From: Aplysia californica
Taxonomy: Eukaryota
Assembly (NCBI RefSeq): GCF_000002075.1
Contig: NW_004797287.1
Location: forward strand, 907,900-971,899
Length of the DNA stretch: 64,000 nucleotides
Reading direction: 5' to 3'
The notes under the pieces are model-generated. The model ran no database searches, was not told the DNA's origin, and was given only the letters and a program-made list of their open reading frames with translations. Below, piece by piece: positions 25,850 through 32,830 of the stretch; the stretch's first letter is position 1, and each line of letters opens with the position of its first letter. Made by a program: the position numbers and the translations under genes.

Positions 25850-26535
25850 CACTGGTAGTATCAGAACACCTACCACAGGATGGTCAAAAGCAAAAGAAAC
25901 AACTGGCAGTGTTTGTTTGATCCACTGTGATTACATTTTGCAACACCACTGATACATTTATGACAGGGCAACATCAACACGCTGCAAAGAACAATCCAGA
26001 ATACAAAAGTCACTTCAACATTCAAGGTGAAAATCAGCCAGAAGCTCTTCCCAGCCTATTCTACTCCTGCCATCCTATCCCCCTGAAAAGACTCAACCTA
26101 CCCCTGCTGCCCACTCACTATCCCCCCCCCCAAAAATAATTTTAAAAAAAAATTCTACACTGTTTCCCTCATATCCCTCCCGCCATGGCCATGGCAATAC
26201 TGTCTAACCTATCCTACTCTGAACCTAGTCTGTCCATCTAGGTCTCTATCAACCTATCTCTATAGGGCCACAGCAGTGTAGGTAGGAGTCTTTTAAAGGG
26301 GGAAGAGGGGGACAGAAGTAGAATTGGGTGGGAAGAGCTGCCTAATGATTTTGAGCTTGAGTGTTGGAAGGGAATTTTGCATGCTAGCTTGTTCTTTTCA
26401 GCTTGTTGGTGCTGCATTGCCATTACTGTTTCAATGATGCTGTAAAACGCATACTCAAAAATAGATCAAACAAACACTACTAGCTGTTTATTTGACCATC
26501 TACCTTCTGTGGTAGACTTACTGATAACACCAGTG
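25850..26535 (-). ncRNA. Long imperfect inverted repeat / hairpin copy 1 (arms ~25850-26112 and ~26265-26535)
   Basis: The reverse complement of the right arm aligns end-to-end with the left arm (e.g. AGTGTTTGTTTGATC / GATCAAACAAACACT; AGCTCTTCCCA / TGGGAAGAGCT; AAAAGACTC / GAGTCTTTT). The inverted repeat is certain; RNA function is inferred. Confidence 0.75.
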
Positions 26536-27692
26536 CCTTCTTGCCGAAAAGTACGATGAGCGACAGTAATCTGAGAAAGTAAATTCAAAATGAAATCAGT
26601 TTGAATTATTACATTTTGAGTTTAAGCACATTCATATTGGAGCATCTAAATTATTTGATACGTGATTATTTAAATGCAGCAGCACATTCTATTTACATAA
26701 TCTAAGTAGTAAAAAATGGTAGTATGTGACACGGGAAGGAATGTTTGCTGTTCAAGGAAAGGTATACACCCTACATTGTGTCCTTTTAATCATTTAAAAA
26801 TTGTGTTTCCAGTATTCCTATACTGATGTGAAAAGAAAGACATGACCATAAGAGGCTGAAAAATAAGTACAACCTTCAAATGACACTGAAGCAAACATCA
26901 ATTGTTTCCATTAGAATTACGACGATTACGAGCAACATTCGTTGGTTTATTTTCAGGAGCGATTANNNNNNNNNNNNNNNNNNNNNNNNNNNNNNNNNNN
27001 NNNNNNNNNNNNNNNNNNNNNNNNNNNNNNNNNNNNNNNNNNNNNNNNNNNNNNNNNNNNNNNNNNNNNNNNNNNNNNNNNNNNNNNNNNNNNNNNNNNN
27101 NNNNNNNNNNNNNNNNNNNNNNNNNNNNNNNNNNNNNNNNNNNNNNNNNNNNNNNNNNNNNNNNNNNNNNNNNNNNNNNNNNNNNNNNNNNNNNNNNNNN
27201 NNNNNNNNNNNNNNNNNNNNNNNNNNNNNNNNNNNNNNNNNNNNNNNNNNNNNNNNNNNNNNNNNNNNNNNNNNNNNNNNNNNNNNNNNNNNNNNNNNNN
27301 NNNNNNNNNNNNNNNNNNNNNNNNNNNNNNNNNNNNNNNNNNNNNNNNNNNNNNNNNNNNNNNNNNNNNNNNNNNNNNNNNNNNNNNNNNNNNNNNNNNN
27401 NNNNNNNNNNNNNNNNNNNNNNNNNNNNNNNNNNNNNNNNNNNNNNNNNNNNNNNNNNNNNNNNNNNNNNNNNNNNNNNNNNNNNNNNNNNNNNNNNNNN
27501 NNNNNNNNNNNNNNNNNNNNNNNNNNNNNNNNNNNNNNNNNNNNNNNNNNNNNNNNNNNNNNNNNNNNNNNNNNNNNNNNNNNNNNNNNNNNNNNNNNNN
27601 NNNNNNNNNNNNNNNNNNNNNNNNNNNNNNNNNNNNNNNNNNNNNNNNATTCGTATTTGCGGTAGTCCAGTCCAATAGGTGGTCATCTGTCC

Positions 27693-28394
27693 CACTGGTA
27701 GTATCAAAACACCTACCACAGGATGGTCAAAAGCCAAAGAAGCAGCCGGCAGTGTTCGTTTGATCCACTGAGTATACATTTTGTAAAACCACTAATACAA
27801 TTCTGACAGTGCAACACCAACACGCCGCAGAGAACAATCCAGTATACAAAAGTCACTTCAACACTCAAGTTGAAAATCAGCAAGCAGCTCTCCCCAGCAT
27901 ATTCTATTCCTGCCACCCCATTCCCCCTGAAAAGACTCAACCTACCCCTGCTGCCCACTCACTACCCCCCCCCCTACCCCCAAAAAATGAACAAAAGAAA
28001 AAAAATCGTACACTGCCCCCCTCATATCCCTCTCGCCATGGCCATGGCAAAACTGTCTACAAAATCCTACTCTGAACCTACCCTGTCCATCTAGCTCCCT
28101 ATCAACCTATCTCTACCTCTACAGGGCCACAGCAGAGTAGGTGGGAGTCTTTTAAAGGGGGAAGAGGGTGACAGAAGTAGAATTGGGTGGGAAGAGCTAC
28201 CTAATGATTTTGAGCTAGAGTGTTGGAAAGGAATTTTGCAAGCTAGCTTGTTCTTTGCAGCTTGTTGGTGCTTCACTGCCATTACTGTTTCAATGATGCT
28301 GTAAAACGTATACTCAAAAATGGATCAAACAAACACTACTAGCTGTTTATTTGACATTCTACCTTCCGTGGTAGACTTACTGATAACACCAGTG
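27693..28394 (-). ncRNA. Long inverted repeat / hairpin copy 2
   Basis: Same arms and loop as copy 1, CACTGG...CCAGTG ends. Confidence 0.75.
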
Positions 28395-29685: not shown

Positions 29686-30500
29686 CACTGGTAGCATCAG
29701 AACACCTACCAAAGGATGGTCAAAAGCCAAAGAAGCAGCTGGCAGTGTTCGTTTGATCCACTGAGTATACATTTTGTAAAACCACTAATACAATTCTGAC
29801 AGTGCAACACCAACACGCCGCAGAGAACAATCCAGTATACAAAAGTCACTTCAACACTCAAGTTGAAATCAGCAAGCAGCTCTCCCCAGCATATTCTATT
29901 CCTGCCACCCCATTCCCCCTGAAAAGACTCAACCTACCCCTGCTGCCCACTCACTACCCCCCTCCCCCCNNNNNNNNNNNNNNNNNNNNNNNNNNNNNNN
30001 NNNNNNNNNNNNNNNNNNNNNNNNNNNNNNNNNNNNNNNNNNNNNNNNNNNNNNNNNNNNNNNNNNNNNCCCCCCCCCCCCCCCCCCCCCCCAAAAAAAA
30101 AGAAAAAAAGAAAGAAAAATCCTACACTGCCCCCTCATATCCCTACCGCCATGGCCATGGCAATACTATCTACAAAATCCTACTCTGAACCTAGCCTGTC
30201 CACCTAGCTCCCTATCAACCTATCTTTACAGGGCCACAGCAGTGTAGGTAGGAGTCTTTTCAAGGGGGAAAGATGGTGACAGATGTAGAATTAGGTATGA
30301 AGAGCTGCCTAATTATTTTAAGCTTGACTGTTGGAAGAGAATTTTGCATACTAGCCTGCTCTTTGCAGCTTGTTAGTGATGCACTGCCATTACTGTTTCA
30401 ATGATGCTGTAAAACGTATACTCAAAACATGGATCAAACAAACAAAACCAGCTGTTTATTTTACCTACCTTCTGTGGTAGACTTACTGATAACACCAGTG
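29686..30500 (-). ncRNA. Long inverted repeat / hairpin copy 3 (100-N gap inside loop)
   Basis: Same arms and loop as copies 1-2. Confidence 0.72.
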
Positions 30501-32599
30501 CCTTCTTGCAGAGAAGTCTGATGAGTGACAGTAATCTGAGAAAAATAATATATTAGTTTGAATTATTAAATTTTAAGTTTTGAGTACAGAAAAGCACATA
30601 GATGTAATCATGTTCATATAATGCACAAATAATAAGACAGACAGGACAAACAGAAGTCGGAAAGGGGGAAAAAATGAGCTACCCTCATCCCGCACTAAAT
30701 AAGAAATAGAAGTACATTAATTGTCATTGATTGACTGGGTATCTATTTTATGGTACAATGAAGTTAATCCTGTTCCTGACAGTGCGACAAATATTTTCCG
30801 AACATAGGTGTCTCTTCCTAATATTTTATCTAGACCTTTACAGAAACGAGGATTTTTCTTAGGTCAACATTAAAAAACATCTATGTTGGATCATCTAAAA
30901 TATCTTGTACGTTTATAATATTAAATTCAACACGTTCTTTTAAAATAAGCAAAGCAATTAACAAAAATGTAGCTTGTGACACAGAAAAGAGCTTGTTCTT
31001 CAAGGAAACGTCTGTGCTACCCATGTTTGTCCAATTTTTAATTAACATTTTCATTACCACTATTCTTTTACTGGTGTAAAAAGAGACATGACCAGGGACA
31101 ATTTTTGAGAGACACAATTAATGTAAAAAAGAAACTTTCAAGTTTACCCACCAATGGGCATTCTTTTTCAGTCGTAATAGTTAAATAGCGTCTTAATACA
31201 TGCAATAGGCAAAACAAATAAAAAATTACCTCCGAGGCAGATCATTCAAAACTTCTCGTTTCTTGACACAGTCGATATAGACAGTTCACTCGTTCTGTTG
31301 GCGATCCGCCGGTCCACCTGGCAGTACTGGGGATAAAAAACATGCTTCAAAGAAAACCAACAATTTTATTTAGTTTCAGAGGATAAAAACATTCACTAAA
31401 CTGGTGCCGATCAAGCAAACCCCCTAACATCTTTACAGTTCTATTTACAAAAATCAATATTCATTATATGGGTCGGACAGAAGTGATAAAAGACAAGTTA
31501 CAATTACAAGTGCGAGTTTTTGAGAGAGGCCTAGATATTTAATGCCAGGGCCACCAGTGCAAATGATGACATTTTTTCAAGTAAAAAAGGGCAAACTTAC
31601 TCATACACAGATTTAGTTTTAATCACACAAAAAAAAGAAAAAAAAGAATAGCACAAAATCATCAAATTATTATGGTCATTTTCAGGACCAAGACGTGCAT
31701 AGGGACTCTTTAAGAAACGCCTAAATGCTAATATAAAACTTACTGACCAACCAATGATTGTTCTATTAGTTTTACTACAGAAATAACTTACATAATGTCT
31801 TAGTAAGTCAGTAAATAAAGTTGCAAGACATTTTTCAAAGACAAATGCCTTCTGAGGCCGACCACCGGTCATCACTTATTGGCAGTCTTCTCGATAGGGG
31901 GCCCCTTAGCCTGTACTATCCTGTAGACAGTTCTCCGATCCTCAAGTCCTCCAGTATGTTCTCCGTCCAGGAGGCACACATCCGCTTCCGCAGGTGGCAG
32001 GCCAGTCCTACAGATAATCCTCCATGTTTGTAGGCGGTCCTAGTAAAGAAAACGTGTCAGAAAATTCAATATTAGAATATTCAAGATACAGGTGGTACAG
32101 ACGTAGTTAAAAGTAGGTTACTAATATGACAAGTGCAGGTTTTTGAGAGAAGCCTAGGCGTGAAAAATCACAATTATTTAAAGCGGAGCTATCTGTGCAA
32201 ATGTTCAAAATTTCATATAATGTATAAGACTATGACACTACAGAAGCTTTATTGTGTGCTGTATTTGTTTGAATTATAATGTATTATAAGAAAATTATAA
32301 TGTTTAGGTAGATTTTCAGGACCCAGATAATTAGGGGAAATTTTTGAGAAACGCCAAAATGCAAAAAATATGAAACTTTCTCACTCACCAATTCTTGAAG
32401 TTTTAGTGCAGAAATAATAAGTTACATAATATCTTAAGTCGGAGAGAAAAGTTACATAATATCTTAAGTCAGAGAGAGTTGCAATACATTTCAAAGACAA
32501 TTACCTTCTGAGGCCAACCATCATTCATCACTTCTCATTGACAGTCTTCCAGTACCATGGGTGATCCTTTAGGCTGTCAACCTGACCAACTGGTGGACC

Positions 32600-32830
32600 A
32601 ACTGGTGGTATCAGAGCACCTATCACAGAAGGTCAAAAGCCAAAGAAACAGCTACCAGTGTTTGTTTCATCCATTGAGTATATATTTTACAGCACCATTG
32701 ATACAATTCTGGCAGCACAACACCAACAAGCTGCAAGGAACAATCCAGTATACAAAAGGCACTTCAACACTCAAGCTTAAAATCAGCAGGCAGATCTACC
32801 CACGCAATTCGACTTCTGTCACTCCCGTTC
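32600..32830 (-). ncRNA. Hairpin copy 4, one arm only (partner arm would lie in the N gap 32831-33696)
   Basis: Aligns with the left arms of copies 1-3 and has the same flanking splice donor (32503-32504). Confidence 0.55.

What the first reader, a model, noticed from the sequence alone, without database searches (positions are those of the whole stretch)
25850..32830. Tandem array of long fold-back cassettes: candidate hairpin-RNA (endo-siRNA precursor) locus
Seen: three complete ~690-nt imperfect inverted repeats (arms ~260-270 bp, loop ~150 nt) and a fourth arm cut by a gap, with no conserved ORF. Known: Drosophila hpRNA genes are spliced Pol II transcripts with long imperfect stems processed into siRNAs, and some occur in rapidly duplicating clusters that silence host genes or meiotic drivers. 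Inference: this may be an analogous, undescribed hpRNA cluster in this animal.
Basis: partly seen in the sequence, partly recalled or inferred. Interest (0 to 1): 0.88.

Follow-up and report, generated by a model that had tools for sequence, protein, structure and literature searches.

The report
Hairpin repeats inside a dispersed composite element
The long fold-back hairpins are real, but they are internal parts of a large non-coding repeat element found at dozens of places in this (probably sea-hare) genome, so this locus is one decaying copy of a repeat family, not a dedicated small-RNA gene cluster.

Summary
Observation confirmed. There are three ~690-nt fold-backs (25850-26535, 27693-28394, 29685-30500) and a fourth arm (32598-32830) cut by a gap. 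Each folds far better than shuffled sequence.

They are not a unique hpRNA locus, and they are not independently inserted MITEs. Each fold-back sits in a ~2.0-2.1 kb unit, and that unit's flanks are conserved at every other copy examined. The genome holds roughly 160 such units. The arrays lie inside a colinear 8-18 kb non-coding composite element. In this window it runs from ~18400 to at least 34448, and it recurs on at least 38 scaffolds with a sharp shared left end.

The minus strand carries RNA-like signatures:
- The family consensus stem has 20 G:U versus 6 A·C mismatches.
- The consensus structure is twice as stable on that strand.
- A loop palindrome, CCATGGCCATGG, is nearly invariant.
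- Exon-like modules end in AG|GT.

However, changes private to single copies are neutral, the family consensus folds better than any copy, and the exon-like modules are full of stop codons.

Transcription could not be shown. Two papers report that molluscs lack the endo-siRNA machinery.

The scan noted what looks like the same family earlier on other DNA of this genome (s1-725171, s1-725177).

Verdict: a member of a dispersed composite repeat family. An RNA-level function for source copies remains possible.

The parts
18400..19130 (-). Left terminal unique region of the composite element (3' end if read on the minus strand)
   Evidence: Colinear at 82-85% identity in C290, C468, C819 and C944. 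In at least 16 loci the matches start at window 18400 +/- 2. The flank beyond this end at C468 is not shared with other loci.
19130..25200 (.). Array of ~1.35-kb repeats made of 47-bp satellite blocks, (AC)n tracts and a unique piece; part of the composite
   Evidence: TRF rows, the sequence itself, and the same order and orientation at six other loci.
25212..25849 (-). Exon-like module without a fold-back, ahead of the first fold-back on the + strand
   Evidence: Homologous to the module at 31824-32480 and to the corresponding position in C178, C819, C468 and C262.
25850..26535 (-). Fold-back A, with loop palindrome CCATGGCCATGG at 26183-26194
   Evidence: It is an internal-type copy: left arm 89% and right arm 94% identical to B.
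26536..26965 (-). Rest of unit A up to the gap
   Evidence: 98% identical to 28395-28824.
27693..28394 (-). Fold-back B, with loop palindrome at 28036-28047. On the minus strand a GTAAGT lies at 28380-28375 and a CAG ends at 27695.
   Evidence: Used as the reference copy for the genome search.
28395..29684 (-). Non-hairpin part of unit B. Contains exon-like pieces at 28381-28432, 28956-29066, 29383-29487 and 29618-29684.
   Evidence: Conserved at 75-90% across loci, fairly uniformly. About 159 first-look candidates genome-wide. 35 of 45 copies of the 28956-29066 piece carry in-frame stops.
29685..30500 (-). Fold-back C, with assembly gap 29970-30069 in the loop homopolymer and palindrome at 30149-30160
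30501..32597 (-). Three ~640-bp exon-like modules without a fold-back
   Evidence: Direct repeats D6, D7, D9, D10 and D11. Colinear with C819 11546-13744.
32598..32830 (-). Left arm of fold-back D, cut by the gap
   Evidence: The best match (92%) is the last fold-back of the C819 locus, which indicates positional homology.
33697..34448 (-). Right-hand unique region of the composite (5' side on the minus strand), with a CCAAT-box-like motif near 33975. Its outer end is hidden by gaps.
   Evidence: 77-86% identical at at least 15 loci, always in the same orientation and 7.5-17.7 kb from the left end. Sequence read.

Best explanation
The fold-backs are built-in parts of a ~2.0-2.1 kb higher-order repeat unit. 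That unit is arrayed inside a large (8-18 kb) non-coding composite element, which is present at dozens of loci in this genome. The genome is probably Aplysia californica AplCal3.0, judged by its size.

Shown here:
- The unit's flanks are conserved at every copy examined.
- The whole locus is colinear between scaffolds, in this order: left unique region, 47-bp satellite/(AC)n repeats, hairpin-unit array, modules without a hairpin, last hairpin, right unique region.
- The left end is sharp and shared between loci.
- Hairpin counts track unit counts.

Inferred history:
1. The fold-back arose once, inside an exon-like module of a gene-like sequence that no longer codes for protein. It arose either by insertion of a CACTGG...CCAGTG fold-back element or by local inverted duplication.
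2. It was multiplied by tandem duplication of the unit.
3. It was then spread when the whole composite was copied around the genome, by transposition or another duplication mechanism that remains unidentified.

The source lineage was probably transcribed from the minus strand, and its hairpin was probably shaped at the RNA level. The signs are the G:U bias, the conserved apical palindrome, and a GTAAGT...CAG pair at the hairpin base.

The dispersed copies, including the three and a half in this window, are drifting neutrally and losing base pairs. If such a copy is transcribed, it would make ~270-bp imperfect dsRNA. In a mollusc that is more likely a substrate for RNA editing or dsRNA sensing than for an siRNA pathway.
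For: Dispersed family:
- The genome search with fold-back B gave 396 first-look candidates. The 40 scored are full-length copies at 79-88% identity on at least 25 scaffolds, often 2-3 per scaffold.
- The 70 bp on each side are alignable in all 28 copies read.
- The entire unit is conserved at 75-90%.
- The unit without its hairpin gives ~159 candidates. This is roughly consistent with 396 for a two-armed query that also matches in reverse.

Large discrete element:
- Colinearity holds from window 18400 to 34365 with C290, C468, C819, C944, C178 and C262.
- The left end falls at 18400 +/- 2 in at least 16 loci.
- The ~89 bp flanking the C468 copy are unique.
- The right region is conserved at at least 15 loci. 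Left-to-right spans are 7.5-17.7 kb and the orientation is constant.

Array older than dispersal:
- A diverged first-position hairpin (70-74% identity) recurs in five loci.
- Fold-back D matches the last hairpin of C819 best.

Decay of the copies:
- The consensus folds at -398.6 kcal/mol. Copies range from -300.9 to -371.8; A is -307.3 and B is -334.3.
- Singleton changes at Watson-Crick pairs: 51 to G:U, 59 to A·C, 130 to other mismatches.
- Stems and loops have equal singleton rates.

Non-coding:
- 35 of 45 copies of one exon-like piece have stops and 12 have frameshifts.
- No Pfam or Rfam family matches.

RNA-level signature in the family's older variation:
- The consensus stem has 20 G:U versus 6 A·C mismatches.
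- Shared variants: 54 G:U versus 22 A·C.
- The flanks show no such transition asymmetry.
- Consensus structure energy is -156.4 kcal/mol (187 pairs) on the minus strand versus -73.1 (115 pairs) on the plus strand.
- 14 pairs show double changes, versus 5.7 +/- 2.0 in shuffles.
- The palindrome is exact in 25 of 28 copies.
Against: - The mode of spread is not established. No long terminal inverted repeat exists, because the 330-bp left-end probe is never found inverted near a right end.
- The hairpin as a whole is more conserved than the neighbouring unit sequence: stems are 5.4% diverged from the consensus versus 14.9% for the adjacent 500 bp, and singletons run at 0.023 versus 0.035 per site per copy. 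This could mean some ongoing constraint, or it could reflect noisier alignment of the flank.
- The excess of double changes is not matched by the slid-partner control, which gives 12-21 such pairs.
- Only 28 of ~160 copies were analysed.
- Expression is unknown. Only contigs could be laid, and most looked like DNA.
Confidence: 0.72

Rival explanations
1. Family of mobile-element-borne, spliced, non-coding hairpin RNA genes that are still functional. Many copies, possibly this one, would be transcribed from the minus strand. The G:U-rich ~270-bp stems and the invariant palindromic apical motif would act at the RNA level, for example as dsRNA-binding-protein or ADAR substrates or decoys, through loop-loop dimerisation, or as a source of non-canonical small RNAs.
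For: - Strand-specific stability in 28 of 28 copies.
- G:U versus A·C bias of 20:6 in the consensus.
- Consensus structure twice as stable on the minus strand.
- Hairpin more conserved than the rest of the unit.
- Palindrome exact in 25 of 28 copies, with ~3 changes observed against ~8 expected from the singleton rate.
- Modest excess of double changes.
- Exon-like AG|GT modules and a CCAAT-like motif upstream on the same strand.
- Two earlier scan notes reached this reading on other copies (s1-725171, s1-725177). These are unchecked leads, not support.
Against: - Singleton substitutions show no bias toward preserving pairs (51 versus 59).
- Stems and loops change at equal rates in singletons.
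- Every copy folds worse than the consensus.
- No transcript or canonical splice joint was seen.
- The window's copies are among the more decayed in the family.
Confidence: 0.18
2. hpRNA / endo-siRNA precursor cluster in the Drosophila sense. The hairpins would be diced into 21-22 nt siRNAs that silence a host gene or a selfish element.
For: Long imperfect inverted repeats, locally duplicated, with strand-specific wobble pairing and a gene-like setting.
Against: - The locus is one of dozens of decaying copies.
- No gene with homology to the arms appeared among the scored matches.
- No RNA evidence was obtained.
Confidence: 0.05
3. Independently inserted fold-back or CACTA-type MITEs that happen to cluster at this locus.
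For: CACTGG...CCAGTG termini, long inverted arms, and a CC dinucleotide on both sides.
Against: - All 28 copies read share the same flanks for hundreds of bases on both sides.
- Copy number matches that of the host unit.
- No copy with unrelated flanks was seen.
- A 2-bp CC is not a recognised TSD for CACTA elements (3 bp; from general knowledge).
Confidence: 0.02
4. Assembly artefact: the local tandem array is inflated by haplotype or collapsed-repeat misassembly around the gaps.
For: Near-identity of A-right to B-right (94-98%) and of B-left to C-left (98%), each next to a gap. The assembly has very many gaps.
Against: - One gap-free contig (27649-29969) by itself contains a full hairpin plus the next left arm.
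- Similar arrays of 3-8 units occur at many other scaffolds.
- A's left arm differs from B's by 11%.
Confidence: 0.03

Closest known systems
Drosophila hairpin-RNA (hpRNA) genes, e.g. hp-CG4068, hp-CG18854, Nmy/Tmy (PMC10317233, PMC10292708)
   Same: Inverted repeats of several hundred nt with imperfect, wobble-rich stems. Local tandem duplication. A setting in a spliced, non-coding, Pol II-like gene. Rapid copy-number change.
   Different: - Drosophila hpRNA arms derive from, and target, identifiable genes. No such gene was found here.
- Drosophila hpRNAs depend on Dicer-2 and AGO2, which molluscs are reported to lack.
- Here the hairpins are carried at dozens of loci by a large dispersed element and are mostly decaying.
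- No small RNAs have been shown.
Fold-back / CACTA-type MITEs
   Same: Long inverted arms meeting at a short loop, and CACTG-type termini.
   Different: No independent insertions, no TSD, and flanks conserved at every copy. The hairpin multiplies only as a passenger of its 2.1-kb unit.
Mollusc mobile elements with internal tandem-repeat arrays (e.g. the tandem-repeat-containing MITE DTC84 of Donax trunculus, PMC3879986)
   Same: A mollusc-lineage dispersed element whose core is a variable-length tandem array between unique ends.
   Different: About ten times larger (8-18 kb). It holds two different arrays, one with 2.1-kb units that contain long hairpins and exon-like modules. No terminal inverted repeats were detected.
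Introner-like elements
   Same: The hairpin splits an exon-like module. On the minus strand it has a consensus GTAAGT 14 nt inside one end and a CAG at the other, so it could be removed as an intron.
   Different: There was one ancestral event rather than genome-wide insertions. Splicing is not shown, and the host 'exon' is not coding.

Membership tests
hpRNA / endo-siRNA precursor | Long inverted repeat that folds into an extended hairpin on the transcribed strand | tested here: met
   z = -16 to -20 against shuffles. The minus strand is more stable in 28 of 28 copies.
hpRNA / endo-siRNA precursor | Transcribed as a (spliced) RNA | tested here: inconclusive
   Only contigs of public runs could be laid, and most looked like DNA. 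No canonical splice joint was seen. There was one non-canonical 648-nt skip across the stem, in one low-depth contig.
hpRNA / endo-siRNA precursor | Yields 21-22 nt duplex siRNAs through a Dicer-2 / siRNA-Argonaute pathway | not testable with these tools
   No small-RNA data were reachable. The literature reports that molluscs lack this machinery and its signature (PMC11114477; bioRxiv 10.1101/2025.05.19.654968).
hpRNA / endo-siRNA precursor | Arms homologous to a target or progenitor gene | tested here: inconclusive
   All 40 scored genome matches are family copies. Another 356 first-look candidates were not scored.
Fold-back / CACTA-type MITE | Terminal inverted repeats | tested here: met
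   CACTGG...CCAGTG ends and ~265-nt arms.
Fold-back / CACTA-type MITE | Independent insertions: unrelated flanks at different copies | tested here: not met
   Flanks are alignable in all 28 copies, and the entire 2-kb unit is conserved.
Fold-back / CACTA-type MITE | Target-site duplication | tested here: not met
   Only a shared CC dinucleotide is present. Because the flanks are inherited, each copy gives no independent evidence.
Discrete mobile (or otherwise copied) composite element | Many dispersed copies with colinear internal structure | tested here: met
   Six other loci are colinear over more than 10 kb. Left-end matches lie on at least 38 scaffolds.
Discrete mobile (or otherwise copied) composite element | Sharp shared terminus with locus-specific DNA beyond it | tested here: met
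   Left end: matches start at window 18400 +/- 2 in at least 16 loci, and the adjacent ~89 bp at C468 are unique. Right end: not resolved because of gaps.
Cut-and-paste DNA transposon | Terminal inverted repeats and TSD at both element ends | tested here: inconclusive
   There is no long TIR: the left-end probe is never found inverted near a right end, and local alignment found nothing. Short TIRs and TSDs could not be examined.
Protein-coding gene with repeated exons | Open reading frames kept across copies | tested here: not met
   35 of 45 copies of one exon-like piece carry stops and 12 carry frameshifts. The only protein matches are weak hits to bacterial repeat proteins.

The most novel reading that the evidence does not exclude
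The composite is a mobile, non-coding 'hairpin-array gene'. Its source copies would be transcribed from the minus strand and spliced. Their ~270-bp G:U-rich stems and the near-invariant CCATGGCCATGG apical palindrome would be functional RNA features. This would be a dsRNA-based system (an editing or dsRNA-sensor decoy, loop-loop dimerisation, or a non-canonical small-RNA source) in a phylum reported to have lost the endo-siRNA pathway, spread through the genome by a so-far unclassified large element.
Probability: 0.15. Interest if true: 0.8.

Novelty: new member of a known kind. Interest (0 to 1): 0.35.

Why it matters
For this locus the practical result is a correction: the striking hairpin array is one copy of a repeat family and should not be annotated as a unique small-RNA gene cluster.

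The family itself is worth a note for three reasons:
- An 8-18 kb non-coding element has carried arrays of very long, strand-asymmetric hairpins to dozens of sites.
- It offers a natural set of ~160 dsRNA-forming units for asking what a mollusc does with long endogenous dsRNA when the canonical siRNA pathway is reported absent.
- It poses an open question about how such a large element, without detectable long terminal repeats, is copied.

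Tried and rejected
- **RNA evidence.** The one run search and the one read-laying run gave only contigs. Most runs behaved like DNA, and one (X16) starts with polylinker-like letters and looks clone-derived. No conclusion on expression is possible. The single 27725->28374 skip has non-canonical ends (TA..AC on the minus strand) and is more likely a hairpin-jump artefact or a deleted paralogue than a splice.
- **Multiple alignment of whole units** was too gappy. It was replaced by projecting BLAST alignments onto one unit.
- **Coding test of the exon-like pieces**. 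The script failed on two of the three pieces for lack of matches, so only the 28956-29066 piece gave numbers.
- **Progenitor protein.** Exons were searched one at a time by reference. The joined spliced model was deliberately not built or searched. The 55-aa piece 31875-32039(-) hit only three long prokaryotic repeat proteins (DUF7507, CARDB and others) through a short motif repeated in them. These hits were judged spurious.
- **Terminal inverted repeats of the composite.** None was found by local alignment of end sequences or by the strand and position of left-end matches.
- **piggyBac-like TTAACC motifs** at the shorter left boundaries of C944 and C819 were noted but not followed.
- **Helitron-type ends** (TC...CTRR) do not fit the left end on either strand, judged by eye on two loci only.
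- **Rfam** gave only sub-threshold mir-297 hits in (AC)n tracts.

Full report
**1. The observation**

The window holds three complete fold-backs and one truncated one:
- A: 25850-26535.
- B: 27693-28394.
- C: 29685-30500.
- D: left arm only, 32598-32830, cut by the gap that starts at 32831.

The arms are about 260-270 nt and 73-78% complementary as DNA. The loops are about 150-170 nt. Each loop contains a poly-C/poly-A tract and the palindrome CCATGGCCATGG. Folded as minus-strand RNA, A reaches -307.3 kcal/mol and B reaches -334.3. Shuffles give -201.6 and -215.9, so z = -19.8 and -16.2. No ORF exceeds about 90 aa, and no Rfam family matches.

The gaps were examined first, as asked:
- The 100-N gap at 29970-30069 sits in the loop homopolymer of C. 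Its two flanks align to adjoining or overlapping positions of B, so nothing but homopolymer need be missing.
- The 683-N gap at 26966-27648 is bounded by positions equivalent to 28824 and 29642 of unit B. The remainder of one unit (about 817 bp) fits. Continuity is plausible but not proven.

No gap was filled, and reads were laid only on the gap-free contig.

**2. Not a unique locus and not a MITE**

A search of the window's own genome (927,310,431 bases in 4,332 pieces) with fold-back B returned 396 first-look candidates. The 40 scored are full-length copies at 79-88% identity on at least 25 scaffolds, often two or three per scaffold a few kb apart.

After the 28 fetched copies were oriented, the 70 bases on each side proved alignable in all of them. 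The similarity runs through the whole ~2.0-2.1 kb unit at about 75-90%, without an exon/intron contrast. The non-hairpin part of the unit has ~159 candidates. That is roughly consistent with 396 for a query whose two arms also match each other in reverse. The hairpin therefore has no existence apart from its unit.

**3. The unit lies in a much larger copied element**

Seven multi-kb regions were fetched from six other scaffolds. They show the same order and orientation as the window:
- a unique left region (window 18400-19130);
- an array of ~1.35-kb repeats built from a 47-bp satellite and (AC)n (19130-25200);
- an exon-like module;
- the array of hairpin units;
- modules without hairpins;
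- a last hairpin;
- a unique right region (33697-34448).

A probe across the left end matches at least 38 scaffolds. In at least 16 loci the match starts at window 18400 +/- 2. The ~89 bases just outside that end at the C468 copy are unique, and further out lies an unrelated small repeat. The left end is therefore a true terminus and not an effect of the Gypsy element that abuts it in the window.

The right region is conserved at at least 15 loci. It always lies in the same orientation and 7.5-17.7 kb from the left end. Its outer boundary falls in assembly gaps.

The array predates dispersal, on two grounds:
- A diverged first-position hairpin (70-74% identity to B) recurs in five loci.
- Fold-back D matches the last hairpin of the C819 locus best, at 92%.

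Within the window there has also been very recent homogenisation or duplication, and assembly redundancy cannot be fully excluded: B-left is 98% identical to C-left, and A-right is 94% identical to B-right.

How the composite is copied is not established. No long terminal inverted repeat exists.

**4. Coding potential**

On the minus strand each unit contains several short exon-like pieces that end in AG|GTAWKT. They share a peptide-like core (roughly ..GP.DR.Q...TV.I..VKKREV.ND..). However, 35 of 45 copies of one such piece carry in-frame stops and 12 carry frameshifts. The family-level sequence next to the hairpin has stops in all frames (by inspection).

A whole-library protein search with the longest open piece, given by reference as a single exon, found only weak matches to prokaryotic repeat proteins through a short recurring motif. 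I regard these as spurious. The element is non-coding as it stands.

**5. Is the hairpin an RNA feature?**

Several results point to the minus strand:
- All 28 copies fold more stably on that strand (mean -339.8 versus -268.1 kcal/mol).
- The family consensus stem has 217 Watson-Crick pairs, 20 G:U pairs (read on the minus strand) and only 6 A·C mismatches, which would be G:U on the plus strand.
- RNAalifold gives -156.4 kcal/mol with 187 pairs on the minus strand, against -73.1 with 115 pairs on the plus strand.
- The flanking unit sequence shows no comparable transition asymmetry, so a general transcription-linked mutation bias is not the explanation.
- 14 pairs show a change on both sides, against 5.7 +/- 2.0 in shuffles. 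The slid-partner control gives 12-21 such pairs, so this evidence is modest.
- The apical palindrome is exact in 25 of 28 copies and is the most conserved stretch of the hairpin.
- The hairpin as a whole is closer to its consensus (stems 5.4%, loops 8.0%) than the adjacent 500 bp (14.9%).
- On the minus strand a consensus GTAAGT sits in a bulge 14 nt inside one end, and a CAG closes the other end. The hairpin could therefore be removed as an intron. This is inference only.

Other results indicate that present-day copies are not maintained:
- The consensus folds at -398.6 kcal/mol, better than every copy (range -300.9 to -371.8). A (-307.3) is near the weak end of that range and B (-334.3) is slightly below the family mean of -339.8.
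- Among changes private to one copy at Watson-Crick pairs, 51 give G:U, 59 give A·C and 130 give other mismatches.
- Singleton rates are equal in stems and loops, at 0.0232 and 0.0237 per site per copy.

The strand bias is carried by older, shared variants (54 G:U versus 22 A·C). The simplest reading is that the lineage giving rise to the copies was shaped at the RNA level, while the dispersed copies drift.

**6. Expression**

The single run search found 20 holders, none on record as RNA. Four runs from different studies were laid on 27649-29700, and only assembled contigs were available.
- Coverage patterns are dominated by paralogous copies that pass the 90% identity threshold.
- One tiny run begins with polylinker-like letters and is probably clone-derived.
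- No joint has canonical splice ends.
- One low-depth contig skips 27726-28373 across the stem base. That is what a polymerase jump across a hairpin, or a deleted paralogue, would look like.

Transcription remains untested.

**7. Context from the literature**

The species identity is my inference.

Two studies bear on the hpRNA reading:
- One reports no evidence of endogenous siRNAs across a survey of sRNA biology in 32 mollusc species (bioRxiv 10.1101/2025.05.19.654968).

This lowers the prior for a Drosophila-type hpRNA function. That function also needs arms derived from a target gene (PMC10317233, PMC10292708), and none was seen here.

**8. Earlier notes of this scan**

- Two followed-up notes on other pieces of this genome (s1-725171, s1-725177) describe a transposon-borne, spliced, non-coding hairpin gene family with a conserved self-complementary loop motif. 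The loop palindrome and the dispersal found here strongly suggest it is the same family.
- I could confirm the dispersal, the defined element end, the loop motif and the strand bias.
- I could not confirm a cut-and-paste mechanism or splicing.
- My singleton analysis does not support the claim that the copies generally still look selected.
- Two first-reader notes on this window (s1-755951: hairpins inside exon-like modules; s1-755937: G:U bias on the minus strand) are borne out.

**9. Verdict**

The hpRNA-cluster interpretation is only partly supported: it is a hairpin with an RNA-strand signature, but the locus is one decaying copy of a dispersed composite repeat, and no small-RNA pathway or target is in evidence.

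Interest is moderate to low for this locus. The family as a whole keeps a modest chance (about 0.15) of being a genuinely new kind of mobile hairpin-RNA gene.

Noticed in passing
window 13450-18362 (minus strand): A Gypsy-type LTR retroelement abuts the composite's left end. It has 96-bp terminal repeats (13450-13545 and 18267-18362, 92.7% identical), an RT_RNaseH_2 ORF at 15504-16223(-), and a protein-kinase-domain fragment ORF on the opposite strand at 14363-14827 (Pkinase, E = 8.7e-22).
   Followed up: partly
window 56269-57669 (minus strand): Two adjacent ORFs have reverse-transcriptase (RVT_1) matches and a DUF6451 match. This is probably another, non-LTR-type retroelement.
   Followed up: no
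window 36385-36435: A short degenerate telomere-like tract (GGGTTA/GGTTAG variants) follows long (CT)n runs, just outside the presumed right end of the composite.
   Followed up: no
window 28036-28047, 26183-26194, 30149-30160: The 12-nt palindrome CCATGGCCATGG lies in the hairpin loop. It is exact in 25 of 28 family copies, within a block of ~20 almost invariant columns, and is the most conserved part of the whole unit.
   Followed up: partly
L035:9698-10000 (C468 flank): A ~214-bp small repeat with ~162 first-look candidates genome-wide lies ~90 bp outside the composite's left end at C468. It also occurs within a few kb of the composite at some other loci. It may be a SINE or MITE.
   Followed up: no
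C944 locus position ~3320 and C819 locus position ~2340 (oriented copies of L037 and L039): At two loci the composite's left-end homology stops 180-320 bp further in, next to a TGATTAACC(C/T)TA motif. TTAA followed by CCYTA resembles a piggyBac-type end, so this may be a nested insertion or an alternative terminus.
   Followed up: no
window 27726-28373: One contig of run X17 (depth ~3) joins 27725 to 28374, deleting almost the whole hairpin with non-canonical ends. It may be a hairpin-jump artefact or a deleted paralogue.
   Followed up: no
window 29098-29166: A ~70-bp stretch of the unit has a sharp depth peak in three of the four runs laid (X1, X5 and X17; none in X16). This suggests a much higher-copy repeat fragment embedded in the unit.
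   Followed up: no
G000:C290:715582-716305: The first ~230 bp of the composite's left end occur two to three times in tandem at the C290 locus, about 294 bp apart.
   Followed up: no
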